Positions 851 through 31,938 of a stretch of DNA of 64,000 nucleotides are shown in pieces. The translations under genes were made by a program, and so were the position numbers. The notes below the pieces were generated by a model. The model worked only from the letters and a program-made list of their open reading frames with translations. It ran no database searches and was not told the origin of the DNA. Numbering within the stretch: position 1 is the stretch's first letter; each line of letters opens with the position of its first letter. The stretch is from positions 124,001 through 188,000 of the IMG/VR virus record IMGVR_UViG_3300037502_003770; one strand, given 5' to 3'.

Positions 851-972
851 TTGCATACCTCAAAACGATTAACTACCTTTGTAATGTTGAAACAACAAAC
901 GGCAGACGGTCTGAAATAGCGAAAAAAATTAATAAAAAAACTTGCATACCTCAAAAACAATCACTACCTTTG
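851..972 (+). promoter_or_regulatory. two tandem Bacteroidota-type housekeeping promoters
   Basis: TTGCATACCTCAAAA...TACCTTTG at 851-881 and 942-972; matches the -33 TTG / -7 TAnnTTTG consensus. Confidence 0.8.
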
Positions 973-2889: not shown

Positions 2890-2967
2890 CCCTTACCAAT
2901 ATTAAGCCTATATTAAGTTATAGGTTTTTTTTCTTAACATAAAGATAACATTGCAGGTATTGATTTA

Positions 2968-2999
2968 TTAACAAAAAACCCTTATCTTTGTAGTATAAA
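2968..2999 (+). promoter_or_regulatory. composite promoter (host-type TATCTTTG overlapping class II TTAACA-N17-TAGTATAA)
   Basis: TTAACAAAAAACCCTTATCTTTGTAGTATAAA. Confidence 0.6.
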
Positions 3000-3019
3000 T
3001 ACCTTAAATCAGTTAAACG

Positions 3020-4267
3020 ATGTTAACACAGACCCAATTTGAAGAGCAGTTCAGAAATTTAGTAGCTATCATAGATATAGCAAAAACTAAGTTTCCATCA
3101 TATATTAATAATCCTTTCAAATTAAATATAATTGATGGTTTATTAAGTTTATCTTTTTATAAAATTTCTTTTTCAAAAGAAAAGACAATCACCAAATTTT
3201 CTCAAAAGATAAATAAAACTTTAACAAAAAAAGTTGTTGAAGATACTATTGATGTTATAAAAACTGTTCCTATAAATAGTTTTATTCTTTCAGAAGAATT
3301 TCTTTCTTATTTAGATAATAATCTTTTAATAAAGACTTCTGAAAAAAGTAATAAACTTTACTTTTTTAAATCATTAAATGAAGTAAAGCTTAATGATATT
3401 GATTTTACTTTTGATGGTAAAATTCTTAAAAAGAATAAGACTGGCAGTCTTTCAGAAAGAAACAGAAAACTATTTCTTTTAAATTATTTTTATGCTACAT
3501 CGAGCAATAAAACAATAAATAAAAAATATCTTCTTTCAAAGACAGATATTTCTCATATTGAAAATATTGCTTACAGGAAGTATTTTAAAAACAGAAGTAA
3601 AATTGAAATAGAAGATTTTATTTCTGATACTCAAGTAAGAGTATTTCAATATATTTGTTATTTTGATATAACAAAAGCCAATTTTAAAGCTTTCTTTATT
3701 TTTGTAATGAAAAATATTATTAACAGTAATAATGTTAATGATTATAAGAAAGGGAACTTTAGGCAAGTTTCAATTGAAATAGAAAATGAACAAGGCGATT
3801 TTTCACAAAATACAGCTTTAAATTCTTTATCAAGTGAAACTTTTAATTCTGATTTTGATAGGAATTTTAGTAATTCTTCTCAAAAGAATAAAAGGATGTT
3901 TGATTTAATAATAAATTTACCTTTAAGTAACCAAAGTAGAATTATTCTTAGGTCAATATATAACGTAGCTTTAATTGGTAATACTTCTATTCAACAAGAA
4001 GATAAAAGGAAAAAAAATCAGTTCAAAATATCCGTAATGGATGAGTTAAGAAAAACATTTAGAAAAGATATTAGCGATGATTCATATCGTGTATATCTTA
4101 CTAATATGAATAAATATCTTAAACAAATAGGTATTATTGAACCTGATAAGGAAACCCAACATATTCTAAATGAATATAAAAATGGTGAACTTGATATTAA
4201 GATTGCTTATGAATATATGGAGAACAAAATCAAAAACAGTCTTATTTCAGAACCTTGCATTTCTTAA
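3020..4267 (+). CDS. phage sigma70-like RNA polymerase sigma factor
   Basis: Region-2-like HIENIAYRKY..IEDFISDTQVRVFQYICYFDITKANFKAFFIFVMKNII; region-4-like LPLSNQSRIILRSIY...ISDDSYRVYLTNMNKYLK. Confidence 0.65.
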   Translation: MLTQTQFEEQFRNLVAIIDIAKTKFPSYINNPFKLNIIDGLLSLSFYKISFSKEKTITKFSQKINKTLTKKVVEDTIDVIKTVPINSFILSEEFLSYLDNNLLIKTSEKSNKLYFFKSLNEVKLNDIDFTFDGKILKKNKTGSLSERNRKLFLLNYFYATSSNKTINKKYLLSKTDISHIENIAYRKYFKNRSKIEIEDFISDTQVRVFQYICYFDITKANFKAFFIFVMKNIINSNNVNDYKKGNFRQVSIEIENEQGDFSQNTALNSLSSETFNSDFDRNFSNSSQKNKRMFDLIINLPLSNQSRIILRSIYNVALIGNTSIQQEDKRKKNQFKISVMDELRKTFRKDISDDSYRVYLTNMNKYLKQIGIIEPDKETQHILNEYKNGELDIKIAYEYMENKIKNSLISEPCIS

Positions 4268-4340
4268 CAATAAGATAATATTCAAGGCTTGCGAGTAACA
4301 GTAATAACCATTATCTTTGTAAACATTTTAATCTTTATAT

Positions 4341-4733
4341 ATGGAGCGTTATAGTTTCACAATTTCAAAATTTTCTGTAATTGTACAGAAATTAGTTAAT
4401 CCAAAATCTGTATTATTATGCAGGGAAGAGAAATCTTCTGATAGTAATGCAGTAAATTTCATAACAGCATTAATTGATGTTTGTTATGACGAAATAAAAG
4501 ATTTTTTAGAAAATAATAATGACCTTTTCTTAAAAGACTTATTTCTATTAGAAAATAATATTCTTTCTTGCAATCAAAGCAAAGTAAAAGAATTATTTTC
4601 AGTAGATAGTAACGATATTTTAGAGCCGTTTGGTAAAGGAAATATTACTGAGGTTTTAATTAAAAAGCTAGACTTTACTTTAACGATGATAAGTAAAACT
4701 AAATCTTCAGTTGTAATTCTTTTAAACAAATAA
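4341..4733 (+). CDS. hypothetical protein
   Basis: 130 aa ORF after TATCTTTG promoter at 4312. Confidence 0.7.
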   Translation: MERYSFTISKFSVIVQKLVNPKSVLLCREEKSSDSNAVNFITALIDVCYDEIKDFLENNNDLFLKDLFLLENNILSCNQSKVKELFSVDSNDILEPFGKGNITEVLIKKLDFTLTMISKTKSSVVILLNK

Positions 4734-4866: not shown

Positions 4867-5011
4867 TATTCTTTAACAAAAGAACGTGATTTAGGTTACG
4901 GTTTAAGGTTGTATATAAGGAAAAAACCTATTTCTTTTAGAGATAGGTTTTTTATTTTAACAAAAAAGCTTTATTTCTGTAATATAAATAGTTCACTTAA
5001 ACAACTAAATC

Positions 5012-5389
5012 ATGTTAAACTATATCTTACTTTATATTTTCTTTACTTATGGTATTTCTTTTGCATACCATTTCTTATTGTTGATAACTCTTTTCTTTAA
5101 AAAAGATATTTTCCCTAAGATATATAATTTATATTATGGGAGAGAAACTGAAGAATTAAAATTAGAACAGCTAAGTAATAAAAGATATTATAAAAATGAA
5201 CTATTTAGTAGAGGTTATACCACTAAGAATAAAGAACTAACTTGGTTTATTGTAAGTACTTTATTATTTCCTATGTTACCTATAAGTGTTTTTATTATTT
5301 TAATAATACCTACTACTTTAATTTCTTTAATAGAAAAAGAATTTAAAAAATATAGGGATTCAACTAAGAATGGCAGTAACGAAAATTAA
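5012..5389 (+). CDS. membrane protein (2 hydrophobic segments)
   Basis: Hydrophobic N- and C-terminal stretches; class II promoter at 4957. Confidence 0.7.
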   Translation: MLNYILLYIFFTYGISFAYHFLLLITLFFKKDIFPKIYNLYYGRETEELKLEQLSNKRYYKNELFSRGYTTKNKELTWFIVSTLLFPMLPISVFIILIIPTTLISLIEKEFKKYRDSTKNGSNEN

Positions 5390-5395
5390 CAGAAT

Positions 5396-5441
5396 AGTAA
5401 CATTGCAGGTATTGACAAGTTCAAAAATAGTAGTACCTTTG
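5396..5441 (+). promoter_or_regulatory. host-type promoter with upstream TAACATTG box
   Basis: TAACATTGCAGGTATTGACA...TACCTTTG; near-identical copies at 9496 and 18021. Confidence 0.8.
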
Positions 5442-5494
5442 TAATGTAATCAATCACAATCGAGTTCTAAACAACCCTTAACCTTAATCATAGT

Positions 5495-6495: not shown

Positions 6496-6584
6496 AACTT
6501 TTTGTTTTATTTTGAATATTAAAACCTACTTTCTTTGAAGGTAGGTTTTTTTAACTTTATAAATATTTTTTTGTATTATAAATA

Positions 6585-7298: not shown

Positions 7299-7356
7299 CA
7301 TTGAAAGCTTGACAAAGTGCAAAATTCTTTATACCTTTGTAATAGGTAATTAAACT

Positions 7357-7614
7357 ATGGAAGACTATAAATTTGAGCCGATAATGATAGGAATACATGA
7401 CCGAATGTATCATAATTTGCTTGTTTCTACAATTATCCCTGAAATATATTCTAGTAAATTACCGATATTTATTCCATCGCCACCTGAAAAGATAAAACCT
7501 AATATTCCAAAAATAAAGCTTTCTGATATACTTTACTATCCAAAAATAAGTATAAAAGAACTAGTCTTACCTTACCACAAAACAAGCGAATTTAAAAACT
7601 TCTTTTTAACATAA
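7357..7614 (+). CDS. hypothetical Pro-rich protein
   Basis: Follows host-type promoter 7309-7339. Confidence 0.65.
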   Translation: MEDYKFEPIMIGIHDRMYHNLLVSTIIPEIYSSKLPIFIPSPPEKIKPNIPKIKLSDILYYPKISIKELVLPYHKTSEFKNFFLT

Positions 7615-7657
7615 AGAAGTCTTTTTTTGTAATATAAGTAACTTTTATTTTTAATAT

Positions 7658-8903: not shown

Positions 8904-9498
8904 AAAGATTAAATATCTTTTAGAAGTAATTAAACTTAAAGAAATAACTATTTCTAATTGTAATTTTGTTTTAGATTTTTATAATATAAGTGGTTTTGAT
9001 TATAGATGTCCAAAATGGTATGATTTTTTTAATCATAATTATTATAGAAAATCTAACCCTGTTCTTGAAATAAAAATATTTACATCAAAAAAAGAAGTAC
9101 GTTTTAGAATAAAAGATTTACCAAGTATTTTTCGTAATGAAGTAATTACTTGTTATGTTTCTTTTGAAGCATTTTACAAAATCATGGAAAATATGTCTTT
9201 ACTTGATTTACAATTTATTAAAAGAAATCTTTCCAAAATAAAAAATCAACAGATTAAAAAAGATAAAAATAAAATAGTTAACAATATTATAGAAAAAATT
9301 AAATCATATAAAACTTATTTTTGTGTAAATAATGTTTATAATTCAACATTTGAATTTTATGTAAATAAAATTACTGTATTATCAATATCTTTATACATAA
9401 ATGATATACCATATAATTTTAAAGAATTAAAATGGGAACTAAAGAGGTTTCCGTTGCTTGACCTCCAATACATTGATAAAAGATTAACAATTTCTTAA
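8884..9498 (+). CDS. LLDLQ-family paralogue, two fused units
   Basis: MSLLDLQFIK and FPLLDLQYID, each preceded by its own N-helix. Confidence 0.75.
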   Translation: MKNILIEKIKYLLEVIKLKEITISNCNFVLDFYNISGFDYRCPKWYDFFNHNYYRKSNPVLEIKIFTSKKEVRFRIKDLPSIFRNEVITCYVSFEAFYKIMENMSLLDLQFIKRNLSKIKNQQIKKDKNKIVNNIIEKIKSYKTYFCVNNVYNSTFEFYVNKITVLSISLYINDIPYNFKELKWELKRFPLLDLQYIDKRLTIS

Positions 9499-9578
9499 CA
9501 TTGCAGGTATTGACAAACCGAAAAATAGGTTGTACCTTTGTAATGTAATCAATCACGAACCCTTAAACACATACCGAA

Positions 9579-10046
9579 ATGGCAGTAGGAAAAACTTTTG
9601 TCGAAAGTTTAATACATGAACAAAAAGACCTCAGACATAAAATTATATATTCGATAATTGGATATATAAATGATTCACCTCAAAAAAGGATTGAATTTTA
9701 TGGTACAGACCATGATATTAGGTTGAATATTAATCACCCTAATTATACTTCAGCAGTTCACGTAAAATTGCTGGAAATCTCAATGAATCCTAACTATGTA
9801 GTTACTACTAACTTATTTAGTGATTTAGATACTGATAGATATGATTTAGCTGATATTCATCACATTGATAATATTTTATCATTTAAAGTTAAAACTTTAG
9901 ATGATTTAAATCATTATTTAGTTTCTGATGAAGAATTTAGTAATGATTGGGAGAATGAAGATTCACCTTTAAGTTTCAATGATATATTCACAGATGATTT
10001 AATGGAGATATTAAATCGTTTGAGTTTATTAAACGAAACAGAATAA
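9579..10046 (+). CDS. hypothetical acidic protein
   Basis: Follows host-type promoter 9510-9540; terminator at 10063. Confidence 0.75.
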   Translation: MAVGKTFVESLIHEQKDLRHKIIYSIIGYINDSPQKRIEFYGTDHDIRLNINHPNYTSAVHVKLLEISMNPNYVVTTNLFSDLDTDRYDLADIHHIDNILSFKVKTLDDLNHYLVSDEEFSNDWENEDSPLSFNDIFTDDLMEILNRLSLLNETE

Positions 10047-10062: not shown

Positions 10063-10103
10063 AAAATCCCTTTAACAAATAAAGGGATTTTTTATAATAT
10101 AAA
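10063..10103 (+). terminator. terminator hairpin with embedded class II promoter
   Basis: AAAATCCCTTT-aacaaat-AAAGGGATTTT; TTAACA at 10072, N17, TAATATAA. Confidence 0.7.
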
Positions 10104-12390: not shown

Positions 12391-12395
12391 AATAA

Positions 12396-12451
12396 TTCTT
12401 TCCTTAAAAACCTTTCATTCTTAACAAATGAAAGGTTTTTTTGTATATAAT
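12396..12451 (+). repeat. ~55 bp terminator/class II promoter unit, duplicated at 19482-19536
   Basis: TTCTTTCCTTAAAAACCTTTCATTCTTAACAAATGAAAGGTTTTTTTGTATATAA in both places. Confidence 0.85.
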
Positions 12452-15469: not shown

Positions 15470-15513
15470 AAAATAACCATCTTTAACAAAAGATATGGTT
15501 TTTTGTATTATAT

Positions 15514-15801
15514 ATGATGAATGAAATAAAAGAAAGCTTAATAAATAGAATTATATTAGAAGGTAAATTATATCATGCAGATACAGGTCATTTCGCTCTT
15601 AATATATTTTATTTTTATAATAAAAAAATTAAAATGTCAATTATTATTAACCCTAGTAAATATATTAATAATAAACCGTACATTTATACATACAATCATA
15701 ATTATCATTTTATGACAGAAATTCATAATGAAAAATTATATAAACTATTAAAACAATTACCTTTATTAGATTTACAATTTATCTTGTACTTTATTTTATG
15801 A
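15514..15801 (+). CDS. LLDLQ-family paralogue
   Basis: IKESLINRII ... LPLLDLQFIL. Confidence 0.75.
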   Translation: MMNEIKESLINRIILEGKLYHADTGHFALNIFYFYNKKIKMSIIINPSKYINNKPYIYTYNHNYHFMTEIHNEKLYKLLKQLPLLDLQFILYFIL

Positions 15802-18000: not shown

Positions 18001-18098
18001 ACCATTTCTTAACAAAAAGATAACATTGTAGGTATTGACAAATCCAAAAATAGGTCGTATCTTTGTAAGGTATTCAGAAACAACCTTAACCGAGCCTT

Positions 18099-18164: not shown

Positions 18165-19410
18165 TAAATTATATAATATTTATATTAATAATTATTTTTT
18201 ACTATTTAATAATATACATTTAAATTAATGAAATTAATTCACAAAGGTTATAAATATAGAATCTACCCAAATAAAGAACAAACTGAATTGTTAAATAAAC
18301 ATTTTGGTTCTTGTAGATTTGTATTTAATTATTTCCTTAATTTAAAAATGAATACCTATAAACAAGAAAAGAAAAATCTAAATAATAATTATCTATCTTC
18401 ATTATTAACCCTTCTTAAAAAAGAACAGAATTATTCTTGGTTAAATGAAATTAATTCTCAAAGTTTGCAAGCTTCTTTAAAAAATGTTGACGTTGCTTAT
18501 GATAGGTTTTTTAAAAAGATAAGTCAATATCCAAAATTTAAAAGTAAAAATGATAAACAAAGTTTTAAAGTACCACAGTTTTTAACTATTGAAAATGATT
18601 TATTATATTTGCCTAAATTTAAGAAAGGAATTAAAATAAATATTCATAGAGATTTTAAAGGAAAGATTTTATATGGAACTGTATCAAAAACACCAACAGG
18701 TAAATATTATGTATCTATCACTTGTAAACAAGAATATATTCCTTTTGAAAAGACAGGTTCTATTATAGGAATTGATACTGGTATTAAAGATTTAGCTATC
18801 CTTTCAGATAAAACTGTTTATGAAAATAAAAAGGTTTTAAAGAAGAGGATAAAGAAAATAAAATATAAACAAAGGCAATTAAGTAAGAAAGTAAAAGGTA
18901 GCAAGAGTAGGATAAAACAAAGGAATAAACTTGCAATAGAACATGAGAAAGTAGTAAATATTAGAAAAGATTATTTACATAAAGTAAGTACAGAAATTAT
19001 CAAAAACCACGATATTATATGTATTGAAGACCTTTCAATAAAAAACATGATGAAGAACCATAAATTAGCGCAAGCATTTTCTGATGCAAGTTTAGGTACA
19101 TTCTATGATATGTTAGAATATAAAGCTTCTTTTAATGAGAAGAAAATTATTAAGATAGGAAGATTTTTTGCAAGTAGTAAAACTTGTTCAAAATGTAATT
19201 ATATTAATGAGGAATTAACATTAAAGGATAGGGAATGGACTTGCAAAGGTTGTGGCACGTTGCATGATAGAGATTATAATGCAAGTATAAATATTAAAAA
19301 CGAAGGTTTAAAGATATTATCTGGTTTGGGTTGCAAGTCGGATATAAAACAAAAAGTGATGGAGGCGTTTCCGTTAGGAGAGTCAATGAAATCATATATT
19401 TAGAAATAAA
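18165..19410 (+). mobile_element. IS200/IS605-family element, solo TnpB (IS1341-like), boundaries approximate
   Basis: TnpB ORF without TnpA, interrupting a promoter-gene-terminator unit. Confidence 0.65.
18228..19403 (+). CDS. tnpB: RNA-guided endonuclease TnpB
   Basis: HTH_OrfB start YKYRIYPNKEQ..FGSCRFVFN; RuvC-I GIDTG, RuvC-II IEDL, zinc finger CSKC/CKGC, RuvC-III HDRDYNASINI. Confidence 0.95.
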   Translation: MKLIHKGYKYRIYPNKEQTELLNKHFGSCRFVFNYFLNLKMNTYKQEKKNLNNNYLSSLLTLLKKEQNYSWLNEINSQSLQASLKNVDVAYDRFFKKISQYPKFKSKNDKQSFKVPQFLTIENDLLYLPKFKKGIKINIHRDFKGKILYGTVSKTPTGKYYVSITCKQEYIPFEKTGSIIGIDTGIKDLAILSDKTVYENKKVLKKRIKKIKYKQRQLSKKVKGSKSRIKQRNKLAIEHEKVVNIRKDYLHKVSTEIIKNHDIICIEDLSIKNMMKNHKLAQAFSDASLGTFYDMLEYKASFNEKKIIKIGRFFASSKTCSKCNYINEELTLKDREWTCKGCGTLHDRDYNASINIKNEGLKILSGLGCKSDIKQKVMEAFPLGESMKSYI

Positions 19411-19542
19411 TACAACATGGAGAAAATCCTGATTTTAATATCAATAAAATAAGCCTTGAATTGAACCCTCAATAAAACAATTTCTTTCCTTAAAAACCTT
19501 TCATTCTTAACAAATGAAAGGTTTTTTTGTATATAAAATAGT

Positions 19543-22825: not shown

Positions 22826-23078
22826 AAACTTCTCACTAATAAAAAATAATAACCTAAAATTTATTTTAACTAATCAATATAATGGCTCATTATATTTCAT
22901 CTCTTATAATAATGTAAACAGTTATTATTATATACATTATTTTTACAATAATGACACCCATTTAACTACTGACTCTATTACAGAAAAAGAACTTTATTCA
23001 TACCTACTCTCTATGAATCTACTTGATATTCTCTTTATAAAATCTTATCTTATTAAAAATTCTATATATTACAGTTAG
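22767..23078 (+). CDS. LLDLQ-family paralogue (ATG at 22776 likely)
   Basis: EKITLIGKIL ... MNLLDILFIK. Confidence 0.75.
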   Translation: MQPMEKITLIGKILSLLKNKNFSLIKNNNLKFILTNQYNGSLYFISYNNVNSYYYIHYFYNNDTHLTTDSITEKELYSYLLSMNLLDILFIKSYLIKNSIYYS

Positions 23079-23083
23079 TAACC

Positions 23084-24035
23084 TAAAACATTTATAACAT
23101 TCTTTTAAATAAAACAATGTTTCCAAAACATAAATAGTTAAATATCAAAGAGTTATGAAAAATAATGGTATGTAATAATCACAAAGATTGTTTATTGAAA
23201 AGAATGTTTATACAAAACATTCTTTACTTAATAAAAAGAATCTTCTTAATAAAAACATTGTTCCTGATGAAAACATTGTTTTTTTTTAACAGCACTTTTT
23301 TTTAATAAAACATTCTTTCTAATAAAAACATTCTTCCCTTATATATTACATACATTGTATATAAAACATTGTTCTTAATAAGTAATATATTCTATTACAA
23401 TTACTTATATATAATAAAATAAACTTTTCTTGAATAAAAAGTTGTTTTTATATAGTACTTTTTTTATTGAAACCTATTTTTTCTATAGCACTTTTTTTCT
23501 TTTATATTATAGTTTTTATCTAAAAAAGGTTATTTTACTTGAAAACCTAATTTTTTCTACAGTACTTTTTCTTTAAAGAAGATACTTTTTTAATAAAAGT
23601 TGTTTTTTTCTATAGTACTTTTTTTCTTTTAAAAAAGATTATTTTACTTGAAAACCTAATTTTTTCTATAGTACTTTTTTTCTTTAAGTAAGGTTATTTC
23701 TTTCAGAAGGGAAGCTGTTTATCCCCTCGCCCATCGAGACACTCTAATTTTTTGAAATAAGTTTTCTTAAAGAAGACTTTTTTTCAAAAAACATATATTT
23801 CTTTAAGAAAACTTATTTTTTTATACAGCACTTTTTTTCAGAAAGTAAGTTTTTTATACAGCACTTTTTTTCTAAAACATATTCTTTTTTAAAGGGATAA
23901 ATTTTTCTTAGTAATTATTTCTTTTACAAAGGTAAAACTTTTTTCTTTAAAAACAAAATATTTCTTTAAAGTTTTATTTTTTCCTACAGCACTTTTTTTC
24001 TAAAAGTAAGTTTTTTTCTATAGTACTTTTTTTCT
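23084..24035 (+). repeat. non-coding iteron-like array
   Basis: About 9 AAA(C/G)A(T/A)T(G/C)TT boxes (23084-23375) and 10 A(C/T)AG(C/T)ACTTTTT boxes (23289, 23452, 23485, 23559, 23612, 23668, 23825, 23858, 23986, 24020); ~55 bp duplication 23522/23631. Confidence 0.8.
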
Positions 24036-24236
24036 TTTACAAAGATAGATATAATTTTTATATATACAAAATATTTCTTTAAAAAATTTCTTACCTTATA
24101 TATAGGTATGTTATACCGCTATGTTCCTGATGCCTGAAAAAAAACTTAAAAAACTTTAAGAAAAATTTGGTGGTATGAAAAATTGCCTTTATCTTTGCAG
24201 TAGATAAACAACCCAATAACCTTAACCGCTACTAAT

Positions 24237-24938: not shown

Positions 24939-25040
24939 AAAGCCTATCTTTTTTAAAGGTAGGTTTTTTTTCTTAAAGGTATTGTTTTATTCAGAAAAAA
25001 GGTTTATCTTTGTAATAAGTAAAACGAACTAATAACCTTT
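24939..25040 (+). repeat. terminator+promoter cassette repeat (related copies at 25446, 26222, 26386, 27317)
   Basis: AAAGCCTATCTTTTTTAAAGGTAGGTTTTT; TTATTCAGAAAAAAGGTTTATCTTTGTAATAAGTAAAACGAACTAATAACCTTT repeated at ~26393-26446. Confidence 0.8.
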
Positions 25041-26157: not shown

Positions 26158-26453
26158 TATGTCCTGAGTACCTTGTAAACTACTCACTTCATATATACAA
26201 GTCAATAATATTTTACTTTCAAAAAACCTATCTTTCTTTAAGGATAGGTTTTTTCTTATATAATTAATTTTATCCTGATACCTTACTTAACATAATGAAA
26301 GCCTTTAGAATTGAATAGATTTTTATTAGTAGGATATTTCCTTGAATAAAGAAATTTTATATAAGGAAAAAATATTTTCAGAAAGTTATTGTTTATTCAG
26401 AAAAAAGGTTTATCTTTGTAATAAGTAAAACGAACTAATAACCTTTAGAAAAT

Positions 26454-29352: not shown

Positions 29353-29570
29353 TTATTTCTTTAAGTAAAGCAGTTTTAAAGGTTCCTGATACTGCAAAGG
29401 TAGTTTGATACCTTTAAACTTTACAGTTGCTTAGATAGTCTTTCTAGTGGTTCCTGATACCCTAGAAAAAAAGTTTACTGAAAATTTGGATAACTCAAAG
29501 TAAGGTTATATCTTTGCAAGTGAATAGTAATAAAGCTATTCAATAACCTTAAACCTGATTCCCTTATGAA
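29353..29570 (+). repeat. upstream regulatory block duplicated at 31721-31943
   Basis: TTATTTCTTTAAGTAAAGCAGTTTTAAAGGTTCCTGAT, GGTTCCTGATACCCTAGAAAAAAAGTTTACTGAAAATTTGGATA and AAACCTGATTCCCTTATGAA are shared. Confidence 0.8.
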
Positions 29571-31461
29571 GTACCAACTTAACCCAAGATTAGATAGCTG
29601 CCAACTTAATGCAGTTAATACAGTTGCTCAAGCTACTGAAAATGAAGTTGTAAAAGTTGAGGCTGTTGCTGGTTCAGGCAAAACTACTACAATCATTGAA
29701 TCTATTAAGGAACTTGTAAATAGGGACTTAATACAATACAATAATAATGTATTGGTTCAGTTTAATAAAAATATTGCAACTGAAACAAAAGAGAAAATTA
29801 TGTTCAATAAATTAGATAAGTTTATTGATTGCAGAACTATTCATTCTGTATTTTTTCCTGCATTAAATGTAGTAAAAAAGTTCTTTGGAAAATTGCAAGT
29901 TAAATTAGTTGAGGATAATTTTAAAGCTACCTCAATTGTGAATAAGTATGTAGATGCTTATTGTGAAAATAATAATATTGATTCAGAAAAATCAATTGAA
30001 TTATTTAATCTTTCTGATATGTCAAGATTATTCGATTTAATCCGTTTATTTGCAATTACTGATTATTCAGATGTGGATGCAATTAACGAAATAATAGAAC
30101 GTTACAGTTTAAATATTTCACCGATTGCATTACAATTAATGCAAAATATCTTTGAACTGCAATATCCAAGTAGATATAAAGATATTGAAGTATTTACTAG
30201 TGGTGCTTTTAAATATAGTTTCTATTCACGTTCTGATAAAAAAACTGTAACCGTTTTTGAAAAGAACTTAAATAATAATATTCCTTATATGTATTTTGAT
30301 TTTACCGATATGCTTTATATTGCATATAAGTATTATTCAAGCTTACAAAACGAGCTACCTAGTTTTGAATACATATTTATAGATGAGGCTCAAGACTTAT
30401 CTAAATTGGATTATTGTTTAATTCAATTGATTAAACAAAAAAATTCAAAACTTATTTATGTTGGAGACCACCTGCAAGCTATTAATATGTTTAAAGGTGC
30501 TTTACCTGAATTGTATAAAAATTTCGATGCTACATACAATTGTGAATTAAATTACAATTACCGTAGTGGTTCCGAAATAATTCAGTATGTAAATGAAAAT
30601 ACAGTATGTAAAAATATTGTAAGTGGTTTAAATACTCAAGGTATAATTAATACCGATTATTTAACTACTTCTGAAAATAAAAACAAACTAATATCTTTTG
30701 TAAATGAATTAAAATCATTTTCCGAAGATAAAAGTAATAAAGAAAAACATTTAATACTTTCTGAAAAAAACGATATTTTAATTTCGTTGTATATTCAGTT
30801 AGCAAAAAATAATGTTTCTGATATTACTTTAAAAGGTGTAGCCGAATTATTAACAAGTTACAATACTTGTTTAAACTTTCAGAATGATAAAATGAAAGTA
30901 AAAGCAGTTAAAGATACTGATTCAATCGATACCGTTTTAAATGCAATACAATTGCAATTAAATATGAAAAGAAAAACTTTGCAGTCTTTGTATAATTTCG
31001 ATAATGAAAACGATTATCTAAAAGATACTGATTACTTCAATTTTAGTATCATTGAATATTTAGTAAAAGAACTTACTTCAATGAAGGAATATAATTCTGT
31101 AAAAGAATTAAGTTTGCAAGTAAATAAAATATTGAATAGTTATGATAGTGGTAAGCTTAGTAATAAAATTACCCTAATGACTGTTCATAAAGCCAAAGGT
31201 TTAGAAAGTGATATTGTAACTATCGTTAATTCAGATTTTAAACCTAAAGAAAAATTAAATAAAAATACAGGCAAACCTTATCCAATACCTAACTGGTTAG
31301 TTGAACAGTTTGAAAATTTAAAATATGTTGCTTTTACTCGTGCAGTAAAACAATTAAATATTTTAACATTGCCACAAACTGAAAATGAAAAAACAGGTTT
31401 TAAAAATAGTGGTAGGATGTATAAGGAAAATAACAAAGGTCAAACAGTAAGGAATTTTTAA
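29566..31461 (+). CDS. UvrD/Rep-like superfamily 1 helicase
   Basis: AVAGSGKTT, FNKNIA, RTIHS, DFTDML, FIDEAQD, VGDHLQAI, NYRS, TVHKAKGLE, YVAFTRA. Confidence 0.92.
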   Translation: MKYQLNPRLDSCQLNAVNTVAQATENEVVKVEAVAGSGKTTTIIESIKELVNRDLIQYNNNVLVQFNKNIATETKEKIMFNKLDKFIDCRTIHSVFFPALNVVKKFFGKLQVKLVEDNFKATSIVNKYVDAYCENNNIDSEKSIELFNLSDMSRLFDLIRLFAITDYSDVDAINEIIERYSLNISPIALQLMQNIFELQYPSRYKDIEVFTSGAFKYSFYSRSDKKTVTVFEKNLNNNIPYMYFDFTDMLYIAYKYYSSLQNELPSFEYIFIDEAQDLSKLDYCLIQLIKQKNSKLIYVGDHLQAINMFKGALPELYKNFDATYNCELNYNYRSGSEIIQYVNENTVCKNIVSGLNTQGIINTDYLTTSENKNKLISFVNELKSFSEDKSNKEKHLILSEKNDILISLYIQLAKNNVSDITLKGVAELLTSYNTCLNFQNDKMKVKAVKDTDSIDTVLNAIQLQLNMKRKTLQSLYNFDNENDYLKDTDYFNFSIIEYLVKELTSMKEYNSVKELSLQVNKILNSYDSGKLSNKITLMTVHKAKGLESDIVTIVNSDFKPKEKLNKNTGKPYPIPNWLVEQFENLKYVAFTRAVKQLNILTLPQTENEKTGFKNSGRMYKENNKGQTVRNF

Positions 31462-31938
31462 AATATCCTTACCTCAATATAAAACCTATCTTTTTTAAAG
31501 ATAGGTTTTTTTATATCCTTACTTTATCCTGATACCTACCTTAGTTCTCTATATAGTCTTATTAACGTTTTAAAGCCTCGTTAAGCTACTCTAAATACTA
31601 AATGATAGTTTGATACCTTTATACTATCCTGATGCCTTAAAGATACCTTTATGTAAGGAATAGAACTACCTACCTAGATAACCTTACTTAGTTGTGAAGT
31701 AGTAACCCTATATAAATAGCTTTATTTCTTTAAGTAAAGCAGTTTTAAAGGTTCCTGATTAGTGGTAAAGTAATTTACTATTAAAATAGCTTAGGTTCGC
31801 TTAGAGAGGCTTTATATAGGTTCCTGATACCCTAGAAAAAAAGTTTACTGAAAATTTGGATATATGAAAATAAAGTATTAACTTTGCAGTAGTTAAAGCA
31901 ATCAAGCTTTAATCATAACCAATAAACCTGATTCCCTT

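What the first reader, a model, noticed from the sequence alone, without database searches (positions are those of the whole stretch)
2968..4267. Phage sigma factor with a candidate cognate promoter and positive autoregulation
TTAAC(A/T)-N17-TA(A/G/T)(T/A)(A/T)(T/A)A recurs at 2968, 4957, 6551, 10072, 12421, 15483 and 19507, and with N18 at 7606. The spacing is strictly sigma70-like and unlike the host TAnnTTTG type. The copy at 2968 overlaps a host-type -7 box directly before the sigma-like gene. That arrangement fits a gene first transcribed by host sigma and then by its own product.
Basis: partly seen in the sequence, partly recalled or inferred. Interest (0 to 1): 0.65.

Follow-up and report, generated by a model that had tools for sequence, protein, structure and literature searches.

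The report
Phage promoter class beside sigma-like gene
A 313-kb uncultured jumbo phage, probably of a Bacteroidota host, carries about 45 copies of its own promoter-like motif, and one copy overlaps a host-type promoter in front of a very divergent sigma-like gene, which fits a phage sigma cascade that has not been shown.

Summary
As written, the pattern is not above chance in the window: 8 matches against 5.07 expected. Genome-wide, however, TTAACW-N-TANTATW occurs 48 times at N=17 against 1-13 at every other spacer. Of those 48, 43 lie on the + strand, mostly just upstream of start codons.

The window holds the tail of a cluster of about 45 sites, which I call class A. About three quarters of the sites are fused to or abut a stem-loop, many followed by a T-run. 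This resembles the PeSL cassettes of T4-type phages.

The genome also carries:
- 11 textbook Bacteroidota promoters (TTG-N19/20-TAHHTTTG, class H);
- about 70 boxes of a -10-only type (CTATTTA, class B);
- no Shine-Dalgarno sequences;
- no detectable RNA polymerase;
- a second, 150-aa ECF-like sigma candidate outside the window.

ORF 3020-4267 is sigma-like only by several weak, concordant signals. Its upstream region holds a class H and a class A promoter staggered by 8 bp. Both are conserved in a relative whose protein is 57% identical.

Which sigma reads class A is open. The claim that the spacing differs from the host type is wrong: the geometry is the same and the sequences differ.

The parts
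2904..2933 (+). Intrinsic-terminator-like hairpin (9-bp stem, -8.9 kcal/mol) plus a T8 run. It would insulate the sigma-like gene from transcription coming from upstream.
   Evidence: Fold. Conserved in L003.
2960..2990 (+). Class H (host-type, Bacteroidota sigmaA) promoter of the sigma-like gene: TTG 2960-2962, 20-nt spacer, TATCTTTG 2983-2990. The expected start is about 2995 by the published rule of 4-5 nt after the G.
   Evidence: Rule from PMC6847099. TTG-N19-TATCTTTG is kept in L003.
2968..2997 (+). Class A promoter-like site overlapping the class H promoter, offset by 8 bp: TTAACA 2968-2973, 17 nt, TAGTATA 2991-2997. Weight-matrix score 27.4 bits.
   Evidence: The hexamers and the 17-nt spacer length are identical in L003.
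3020..4267 (+). Sigma-like gene, 415 aa (P0001). The N-terminal 165 aa are of unknown kind. Residues about 175-320 align to sigma regions 2 and 4 of ECF-type models. A C-terminal tail follows.
   Evidence: Pfam Sigma70_r2 E=1.1e-3, 19.1 bits, below the 24-bit cut-off. PHROG 1740 E=2.9e-5. TIGR02952 E=5.2e-4 over residues 188-317. PDB ECF sigma 6dxo E=1.2. Protein-language-model features 0.95, with 26 of 30 nearest clusters carrying Sigma70_r2.
4957..4986 (+). Class A site before ORF 5012. A terminator hairpin (-11.0 kcal/mol as folded alone; about -16 in the 68-nt context fold) lies just upstream.
   Evidence: (33.2 bits).
6551..6580 (+). Class A site before ORF 6585, with a terminator hairpin just upstream. 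The ATG sits at motif position 34, which makes a leaderless transcript possible.
   Evidence: (29.3 bits).
7606..7636 (+). Class A site with an 18-nt spacer, before ORF 7658. TTAACAT is the loop of an 8-bp hairpin followed by a T-run.
10072..10101 (+). Class A site before ORF 10113. The -35 lies at the loop end of a 14-bp hairpin (its first bases in the stem, ACA in the loop) that is followed by a T-run.
   Evidence: (30.7 bits).
12421..12450 (+). Weak class A-like site with -10 TATATAA, inside a 14-bp terminator hairpin. It is one of two exact 55-nt copies. The likely true start is ATG 12455, at motif position 34.
15483..15512 (+). Class A site before ORF 15514. The hairpin overlaps the -35. 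The second ATG sits at motif position 34.
   Evidence: (29.0 bits).
19507..19536 (+). Weak class A-like site (11.8 bits), the second copy of the 55-nt duplicate. It lies just downstream of the TnpB gene and before ORF 19543.
942..972 (+). Class H promoter (TTG-N20-TACCTTTG) before ORF 1080-2612.
4289..4319 (+). Class H promoter (TTG-N20-TATCTTTG) before ORF 4341-4733. That ORF is the conserved 130-aa neighbour of the sigma-like gene.
   Evidence: The neighbour is kept in L003.
5412..5441 (+). Class H promoter (TTGACA..TACCTTTG) before ORF 5495.
7309..7339 (+). Class H promoter before ORF 7357.
9510..9540 (+). Class H promoter before ORF 9579.
18035..18065 (+). Class H-type cassette (TTGACA-N17-TATCTTTG) with no ORF within 160 nt.
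24167..24197 (+). Class H promoter before ORF 24237.
24982..25012 (+). Class H promoter before ORF 25057.
26389..26418 (+). Class H promoter before ORF 26454.
29486..29516 (+). Class H promoter before ORF 29566-31461, a DNA helicase by PHROG 1967 (E=1.4e-62).
31856..31886 (+). Class H promoter before ORF 31939.

Best explanation
The window comes from a 312.7-kb jumbo phage with 22% G+C. No RNA polymerase of its own was detected, and it probably infects a member of the Bacteroidota. It appears to use three promoter classes.

- Class H: 11 sites, all between window 940 and 31,900. It is the host primary-sigma type, TTG-N19/20-TAHHTTTG, and would be read on entry.
- Class A: about 45 sites, genome 35-144 kb with a few beyond. 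The motif is TTAACA-N17-TAWTATAA. The geometry is the same, but the -35 differs (A3 and C5 are invariant). The -10 also lacks the host's near-invariant T-8, T-6 and G-5. Host core polymerase carrying a phage sigma would therefore read it.
- Class B: about 70 sites. It is a -10-only box, tACTATTTAtA, 13-27 nt before the ATG, found ahead of structural and other genes.

The 415-aa sigma-like protein encoded at 3020-4267 is the more likely reader of class A. Its gene has a class H promoter and a class A promoter staggered by 8 bp. Host holoenzyme would therefore make the first transcripts and the protein would then reinforce its own synthesis.

Most class A promoters are fused to, or abut, a stem-loop, many followed by a T-run. 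This makes insulated promoter-terminator cassettes around small orphan genes.

Shown here: the motifs, their geometry, their positions, their conservation and the weak sigma-like signals. Inferred: that any of them is a promoter, which sigma reads which class, and the autoregulation.
For: Motif reality:
- Spacer test: 48 hits at N=17 against 1-13 elsewhere.
- Weight matrix: 44 (+), 4 (-) and 0 in a shuffled genome.
- The unbiased logo recovers the same positions.
- The motif ends at a median of about 27 nt before an ATG.

Independence from hairpins: 24 sites have a stem around TTAACA (12 of them with 8-16 bp). Ten have a hairpin just upstream and 11 have none.

Host type:
- 0 of 447 called genes has GGAG upstream. 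A is enriched at -13/-14 and -3, as published for Bacteroidetes (PMC6847099).
- Eleven intergenic TTG-N19/20-TA(T/C/A)CTTTG sites lie on the + strand within 31 kb.
- The full pattern occurs 39 times against 19.7 +/- 4.4 in shuffles, and 17 of the 24 + strand hits fall in that 31 kb.

The classes are discrete. TTAACW pairs with TANTATW 43 times and with TAHHTTTG 0 times at N17. In class A, T-8 occurs in 0% of sites, T-6 in 18% and G-5 in 18%.

No RNA polymerase was found: Pfam beta-prime and T7-type searches were empty and the largest proteins have other or no identities.

Sigma-like signals for P0001 come, and for its homologue P0003.

The dual promoter is conserved in L003. The 17-nt class A spacer is kept exactly, while a 10-nt indel upstream still leaves a TTG 19 nt from the TA. 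A terminator precedes it.

Three class A sites put an ATG exactly at motif position 34, which is 6 nt after TAWTAT. This fits a start there.

The small sigma gene ends an operon that contains an SbcC-like gene, the same neighbourhood as T4 genes 46/47 and 55. This favours it as the late-type sigma and leaves class A to P0001.
Against: - No profile match of P0001 reaches a curated cut-off.
- Both structure models are poor, with pLDDT 43 and 51.
- P0001 has only one homologue cluster among 1.8 billion representatives. A co-occurrence test of sigma against motif is therefore impossible.
- A second sigma candidate has both region 2 and region 4. As an ECF-type protein it would be expected to need a -35, and 'AAC' is the classic ECF -35 core (my own knowledge).
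- The operon of that second sigma also starts with a hybrid, TTTACA-N17-TAGTATA overlapping TAACTTTG. The cascade order is therefore not fixed by the sequence.
- Classes A and H share T-12, A-11 and T-7. They also share TTTGTA(A/G)T, though that string lies 8 nt further upstream in class A than in class H relative to the -10 box. Help from the host sigma cannot be excluded.
- The host is inferred, not identified.
- No RNA data exist.
Confidence: 0.42

Rival explanations
1. Class A is a phage-sigma promoter class, but the 150-aa ECF-like sigma (genome 49196-49648) reads it. P0001 instead reads the -10-only class B or has another role. The class A copy before the P0001 gene would then be cross-regulation, not autoregulation.
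For: The small protein aligns end to end with ECF sigma models, covering regions 2 and 4. TIGR02937 gives E=5.5e-5 over residues 6-146, and PDB 5uxx matches residues 22-145. ECF sigmas need a -35, and their -35 core is AAC (my own knowledge). TTAAC contains AAC, and C5 is the most informative base. Class B has no -35. The small sigma's own operon starts with a near-class-A site.
Against: The class A -10 (TAWTAT, with invariant A-11 and T-7) is not ECF-like. Known structures place the T-7 pocket partly in region 1.2. The 150-aa protein has no room for that region before region 2, whereas P0001 has 175 residues there (inference). The small sigma's position after an SbcC-like gene matches T4 late sigma gene 55. 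Its promoter has TTTACA, not TTAACA.
Confidence: 0.22
2. The host primary sigma reads class A. It does so either directly, as a weaker variant promoter, or with a phage activator or sigma-remodelling factor bound at TTAACA. The T4 MotA/AsiA system at middle promoters is the model. P0001 is not the reader.
For: Classes A and H have the same hexamer-N17 layout. They share T-12, A-11 and T-7, and both carry the string TTTGTA(A/G)T, though at positions 8 nt apart relative to the -10 box. The published F. johnsoniae data say the -33 element is weakly conserved in the host. The sigma identity of P0001 rests on sub-threshold matches.
Against: Class A lacks T-8, T-6 and G-5, which are near-invariant in host promoters. 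The -35 and -10 types never mix. This argues for two separate recognition systems, not one sigma with a modular helper. Two sigma-like genes are present and would otherwise lack targets.
Confidence: 0.2
3. The repeats are mainly terminators or recombination cassettes. TTAACA would be conserved as a hairpin loop or a recombination site, and the promoter-like look would be a by-product of A+T-rich sequence.
For: TTAACA is the loop of strong hairpins followed by T-runs at 12 sites. Terminator-like sites are enriched, 9 against 2.0 expected. Cassettes lie at the breaks of synteny between close strains.
Against: Twenty-one of 45 sites have no hairpin around TTAACA, yet they keep the exact 17-nt spacing to TAWTAT. 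All sites are oriented with the downstream gene at a fixed distance from the ATG. A terminator needs neither.
Confidence: 0.06

Closest known systems
PeSL (promoter-early stem-loop) cassettes of T4-type phages (PMC2839356, PMC4122927)
   Same: These are repeated intergenic cassettes of roughly 60-100 bp. They combine a -35/-10 promoter with a stem-loop terminator, which is often placed between the -35 and -10. They are concentrated in regions of small orphan genes and at indel or replacement junctions between close strains.
   Different: PeSL promoters match the host sigma70 consensus and are read on entry. Here the cassette promoter does not match the inferred host consensus, while separate host-type promoters exist. 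The downstream part has no Shine-Dalgarno sequence. Mini-circle formation was not tested.
Phage sigma cascades: B. subtilis phage SPO1 gp28 then gp33/34, and T4 gp55 (my own knowledge; T4 annotation)
   Same: The phage has no polymerase of its own. An early gene read by the host sigma encodes a sigma that redirects host core polymerase to a phage-specific promoter class. A later class follows. The -10-only class B resembles the logic of T4 late promoters.
   Different: No sequence similarity to T4 gp55 was found. The pairing of sigmas with classes is not known here. A self-promoter on the phage sigma gene is not, to my knowledge, a described feature of SPO1 gene 28.
Bacteroidota primary-sigma promoters, -33 TTTG / -7 TAHHTTTG (PMC6847099)
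   Same: Class H sites match the consensus at every near-invariant position and in spacing. The translation-start context is also of the Bacteroidota type.
   Different: Class A keeps only T-12, A-11 and T-7 of that box and has TTAACA in place of TTG.
Group 2 jumbo phages (PMC7824862)
   Same: There is no RNA polymerase. The phage carries phage-encoded sigma factors of a minimal and a fuller kind, a family B DNA polymerase and contractile-tail genes. The group includes Bacteroidetes phages.
   Different: Neither sigma-like protein has detectable relatives in phage collections. No gp33 or clamp homologue was identified.
ECF sigma factors with positive autoregulation (my own knowledge)
   Same: The protein has a two-domain region 2 / region 4 core. 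The -35 contains AAC. The sigma gene sits behind its own presumed cognate promoter.
   Different: The -10 is TAWTAT, not the CGT type. P0001 carries a 175-aa N-terminal extension and an insertion in region 4. No anti-sigma partner was identified.

Membership tests
Sigma-70 family (P0001) | Region 2 profile match above the curated threshold | tested here: not met
   Pfam Sigma70_r2 scores 19.1 bits against a 24-bit cut-off, E=1.1e-3, residues 182-234. The homologue P0003 hits the same region with E=0.13. It is the top or only hit in each case.
Sigma-70 family (P0001) | Region 4 helix-turn-helix | tested here: inconclusive
   A Pfam Sigma70_r4 search of the genome found nothing. The ECF model TIGR02952 aligns residues 188-317 to model positions 29-156 of 170, E=5.2e-4, far below its cut-off. 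By eye there is an LPLSNQSRIILRSIY .. ISDDSYRVYLTNMNKYL pattern with an insertion.
Sigma-70 family (P0001) | Overall likeness to sigma factors by an independent method | tested here: met
   Language-model features for residues 165-415 give a best score of 0.95 with 178 shared features. Twenty-six of the 30 nearest clusters carry Sigma70_r2, mostly viral. PHROG 1740 'RNA polymerase sigma factor' gives E=2.9e-5.
Sigma-70 family (P0001) | Sigma fold and binding to core polymerase | not testable with these tools
   The AlphaFold2 models have pLDDT 43 and 51, so no fold search was run.
PeSL-type promoter/terminator cassette | -35/-10 promoter with sigma70-like spacing in a repeated intergenic unit | tested here: met
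PeSL-type promoter/terminator cassette | Stem-loop within or next to the promoter | tested here: met
   Thirty-four of 45 sites have one: 24 around the -35 and 10 just upstream. Fold energies run from -6.6 to -15.2 kcal/mol in the window.
PeSL-type promoter/terminator cassette | Concentrated among small orphan genes and at strain-specific indel junctions | tested here: met
   The cluster at genome 82-144 kb consists of roughly 100-aa ORFs, and the few scanned there had no family hits. Synteny with the 93-97% identical contig L004 is mosaic, with repeated class H (and one class A) cassette pieces at the block ends.
PeSL-type promoter/terminator cassette | Promoter equals the host primary-sigma consensus | tested here: not met
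   Class A differs from the class H / Bacteroidota consensus.
Bacteroidota sigmaA promoter (site at 2960-2990) | TAHHTTTG box with TTG 19-20 nt upstream | tested here: met
   TTG 2960-2962 and TATCTTTG 2983-2990. Consensus.
Positively autoregulated sigma gene | The gene's own promoter carries the cognate motif | tested here: met
   The sequence requirement holds only if class A is indeed the cognate motif. TTAACA-N17-TAGTATA at 2968-2997 scores 27.4 bits and is conserved in L003.
Positively autoregulated sigma gene | The protein directs transcription from that motif | not testable with these tools
   No RNA data hold this phage. A second sigma candidate exists.
T4-type late promoter (class B) | -10-only box with no -35, ahead of structural genes | tested here: met
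   The logo has no information upstream of tACTATTTAtA. The box precedes tail sheath and baseplate genes.
T4-type late promoter (class B) | Sequence TATAAATA and a gp55 homologue | tested here: not met
   The box reads CTATTTA in the direction of the gene. phmmer with T4 gp55 finds nothing (best E=0.098).

The most novel reading that the evidence does not exclude
A Bacteroidota jumbo phage carries an orphan sigma with no relatives beyond one cluster in 1.8 billion proteins. This sigma would re-tool the host's atypical polymerase to read canonical-looking -35/-10 promoters (TTAACA-N17-TAWTAT). Those promoters are built into mobile terminator-promoter cassettes. The sigma would lock in its own expression through a staggered pair of host and phage promoters. 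That would make it a PeSL-like shuffling system that depends on a phage sigma, not the host sigma.
Probability: 0.35. Interest if true: 0.7.

Novelty: new variant of a known kind. Interest (0 to 1): 0.55.

Why it matters
Almost nothing is known about how large phages of Bacteroidota schedule transcription, and the host's promoters are unlike those of model bacteria. This genome offers three cleanly separable promoter-like classes and two sigma candidates. It also offers a compact, conserved 40-bp region where a host-type and a phage-type promoter overlap.

If the model holds, it would give a defined orthogonal sigma/promoter pair for Bacteroidota. It would also show that promoter-terminator cassettes can spread orphan genes while remaining under phage control. 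If host sigma reads class A after all, the sites would redefine how much the Bacteroidota -7 box can vary.

Tried and rejected
**Searches that led nowhere**
- Chance was rejected by the spacer test and the weight-matrix scan.
- Close or distant relatives were sought to test whether sigma and motif co-occur. The phage collection gave nothing by DNA or protein. The word search and the full HMMER search found only P0002 (99%) and P0003 (57%). IMG/VR scans with both sigma candidates found nothing.
- The 18 IMG/VR contigs with one exact class A-like match each look like chance. The three largest hold no P0001 relative.
- Structure: two AlphaFold2 runs, on the whole protein and on residues 165-415, reached only pLDDT 43 and 51. 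No fold search was run, because it would be meaningless.
It gives no evidence either way.
- Expression: no RNA run holds the phage, only DNA contigs from subsurface, aquatic and freshwater metagenomes. Read laying was not used, because contigs cannot show transcript starts.
- T4 gp55, gp45, gp44, gp47 and RpbA found no homologues by phmmer. Only gp46 matched the SbcC-like protein, weakly.
- P0001 and the small sigma show no pairwise similarity.
- The N-terminal 165 residues of P0001 stay unassigned.

**Ideas considered and dropped**
- 'Class A is simply the host sigma70-type early promoter of a non-Bacteroidota host.' Dropped because Shine-Dalgarno sequences are totally absent and textbook TTG/TAHHTTTG promoters are present.
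- Host identification through the TnpB gene was inconclusive. The best matches (about 70%) are short metagenome-bin contigs. Three of the five come from Bacteroidota bins.

**Caveats**
- Gene calls are my own heuristic, the longest non-overlapping ORFs. Distances to start codons carry that uncertainty.
Full report
**What the window is.** The window is bases 124,001-188,000 of a single 312,694-bp virus record with 22.3% G+C. The record carries six tRNA genes and has an estimated completeness of 96%. A heuristic ORF call gives 447 genes, 369 of them on the + strand. Profile scans of the largest proteins find a family B DNA polymerase, an SbcC-like nuclease, a tail sheath, a baseplate wedge protein, a helicase, a primase and PhoH. 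No RNA polymerase of any kind was found. This fits the 'group 2' jumbo phages, which lack a polymerase and carry sigma factors (PMC7824862). No related record exists in the phage collection.

**The observation.** The pattern as written is too loose to stand out in this A+T-rich window: 8 matches against 5.07 expected. Yet all seven N17 sites and the N18 site lie on the + strand just before ORFs. They share TTAACA(A/G)A, a T-run ending in G, and TAWTATAA.

Three genome-wide tests settle the matter:
- With the -10 tightened to TANTATW, the count is 48 at a 17-nt spacer and 1-13 at every spacer from 8 to 27. Forty-three of the 48 are on the + strand.
- A weight matrix finds 44 (+) and 4 (-) sites of at least 10 bits, and none in a shuffled genome.
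- A logo built from every TTAAC lying 30-85 nt before a start codon, with nothing required downstream, recovers G22, T23, A24, T26, A27 and T28.

Most of the roughly 45 sites lie at genome 82-144 kb, with a few ahead of an HNH endonuclease, a clamp-loader-like ATPase and an RNA ligase at 35-97 kb. I call this class A. Sites 12421 and 19507 are weak members and are two copies of one exact 55-nt repeat.

**Hairpins.** At 12 sites TTAACA(G) is the loop of an 8-16-bp hairpin followed by a T-run, which is the form of an intrinsic terminator. A further 12 sites have shorter stems, 10 have a strong hairpin immediately upstream, and 11 have none. The fixed TTAACA-N17-TAWTAT unit therefore does not depend on the hairpin, which argues against a pure terminator reading.

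The combination is what Arbiol, Comeau and Krisch called PeSLs in T4-type phages. [quoted passage not shown] As with PeSLs, synteny with a 93-97% identical strain contig (L004) is mosaic, and repeated cassette pieces, mostly of the class H type, sit at the block ends.

**The host and its promoters.** None of the 447 genes has GGAG upstream. G drops to 3-5% before start codons, and A peaks at -13/-14 and -3. This is the Shine-Dalgarno-free context described for Bacteroidetes (PMC6847099).

The same paper gives the host box as T-12 A-11 H H T-8 T-7 T-6 G-5, with the start 4-5 nt after the G. Eleven intergenic sites match it exactly, each with TTG 19-20 nt upstream. All are on the + strand between window 942 and 31,886, and a twelfth at 18035 has no ORF after it. 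I call these class H. They drive the sigma-like gene, a helicase and several unknown genes.

One point of the finding needs correcting. TTG-N19/20-TA is the same layout as hexamer-N16/17-TA (one search reports 18035 as TTGACA-17-TATCTT). Classes A and H therefore differ in sequence, not in spacing:
- Class A has A3 and C5 in the -35.
- It keeps T-12, A-11 and T-7.
- It has T-8 in 0% of sites, and T-6 and G-5 in 18% each.
- The element types never mix: TTAACW-N17-TAHHTTTG occurs 0 times on the + strand, against 43 for TTAACW-N17-TANTATW.

**A third class.** The most enriched intergenic word is CTATTTA. About 70 copies lie 13-27 nt before start codons on both strands, outside the class A region. 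There is no conserved -35. They precede the tail sheath gene, the baseplate gene and the exonuclease/DNA-polymerase block. This is class B, a -10-only type reminiscent in logic of T4 late promoters, though the sequence differs and no gp55 homologue exists.

**The sigma-like gene.** P0001 (3020-4267) gives only sub-threshold matches, but all point the same way:

| Search | Result |
|---|---|
| Pfam Sigma70_r2 | E=1.1e-3, 19.1 bits (cut-off 24) |
| PHROG 1740 'sigma factor' | E=2.9e-5 |
| ECF model TIGR02952, residues 188-317 | E=5.2e-4 |
| PDB ECF sigma 6dxo, residues 187-237 | E=1.2 |
| Language-model features | 0.95; 26 of 30 nearest clusters carry Sigma70_r2 |

Its one homologue (P0003, 57% identity) hits the same Pfam region. 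Two structure predictions failed. I take it as a probable, very divergent sigma-70-family protein with a 175-residue N-terminal part of unknown kind.

**Its promoter region.** After a terminator at 2904-2933 comes TTG (2960) -N20- TATCTTTG (2983-2990). Offset by 8 bp is TTAACA (2968) -N17- TAGTATA (2991-2997).

In the relative L003 nearly the whole intergenic region is conserved, although the proteins are only 57% identical. A 10-nt indel still leaves a TTG 19 nt from the TA, and the class A spacer stays at exactly 17 nt. None of the other ten class H promoters carries a class A motif. The overlap is thus specific and under selection.

**A complication.** The genome holds a second sigma candidate of 150 aa, at genome 49196-49648. 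It aligns end to end with ECF sigma models. It is the last gene of a tight operon that includes the SbcC-like gene and the primase. That operon starts, after a terminator, with TTTACA-N17-TAGTATA overlapping a host-type TAACTTTG box. Two phage-specific classes and two sigma candidates invite a one-to-one pairing, but the sequence does not say which pairing holds.

I favour P0001 for class A, for three reasons:
- It is the one with a perfect class A site.
- The class A -10 (A-11, T-7) is of the kind that needs a part ahead of region 2. Only P0001 has room for such a part (inference from known sigma structures).
- The small gene sits where T4 keeps its late sigma, after genes 46/47.

Against this, ECF-type proteins classically read an AAC-containing -35, and TTAAC contains one.

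**Mechanism proposed.**
1. Host holoenzyme reads class H on entry and makes P0001, and perhaps the small sigma.
2. P0001 with host core polymerase reads class A. This includes its own promoter, whose start would lie about 8 nt downstream of the host-type start, so expression reinforces itself.
3. The small sigma reads class B.

Three class A sites place an ATG exactly at motif position 34, which is 6 nt after TAWTAT (6585, 12455 and the second ATG at 15517). This fits a start at that position and leaderless messages. Every step after the motif anatomy is inference, and there are no RNA data for this phage.

**Verdict.** The finding is a new variant of known kinds: phage sigma cascades and PeSL-type cassettes. 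It is of moderate interest because it occurs in a Bacteroidota-type setting, where phage transcription is poorly known, and because the cassette promoters do not match the host type.

Noticed in passing
window 23078-24236: This ORF-free stretch holds ten + strand copies of TTTTYTAYAGYACTTTTT at 23283-24031 (13 in the window against 0.04 expected). It coincides with the minimum of cumulative GC skew. It may be an iteron-like array or an origin of replication.
   Followed up: partly
window 18228-19403: A TnpB (IS605 OrfB family) gene matches Pfam at E=1.9e-23. In the 93-97% identical strain contig L004 it lies elsewhere, between the equivalents of window 7976 and 8505, so it moved recently. A class B box (CTATTTA, 18202-18208) lies 20 nt before its ATG.
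   Followed up: partly
window 12395-12449 and 19481-19535: These are an exact 55-nt direct repeat of a terminator/class-A-like cassette. The second copy lies just after the TnpB gene.
   Followed up: partly
genome 49196-49648 (outside the window; L002:1507-1959): A second sigma-like ORF of 150 aa, ECF-like, is the last gene of an operon with SbcC-like and primase genes. It is followed at once by a class B box before PhoH.
   Followed up: yes
window 18208, 32810, 34326, 34932, 37215, 47010, 52434, 53995, 55819, 58932, 61041 (+) and 37185, 46224, 46987 (-): These are class B boxes (tACTATTTAtA), each 13-27 nt before a start codon. The genome holds about 70, with no -35 element.
   Followed up: partly
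genome 10504, 158320, 158926, 177989, 195067, 198029, 198635 and 170230 (-): A family of paralogous genes shares a conserved 3' end that encodes roughly YISKEVRKLLKEYYLKEK. That end contains the class B box for the next gene.
   Followed up: no
window 4341-4733: A 130-aa ORF lies directly after the sigma-like gene and has its own class H promoter. The pair is kept in the relative L003 (9088-9480). It could be a partner or regulator of the sigma-like protein, but no family match exists.
   Followed up: no
window 18009-18070: A complete class H-type cassette (TTAACA.. TTGACA-N17-TATCTTTG) has no ORF within 160 nt. Copies of its first 70 nt recur at 5384-5457 and 9479-9585 and at block ends in L004.
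   Followed up: partly
window 2940-2990 and 4270-4320: An inverted repeat, AAAGATAA .. TTATCTTT, brackets the -33/-35 region of the sigma gene promoter, and AAGATAAT .. ATTATCTT does the same for the next gene. It is conserved in L003. It may be an operator or a structure.
   Followed up: no
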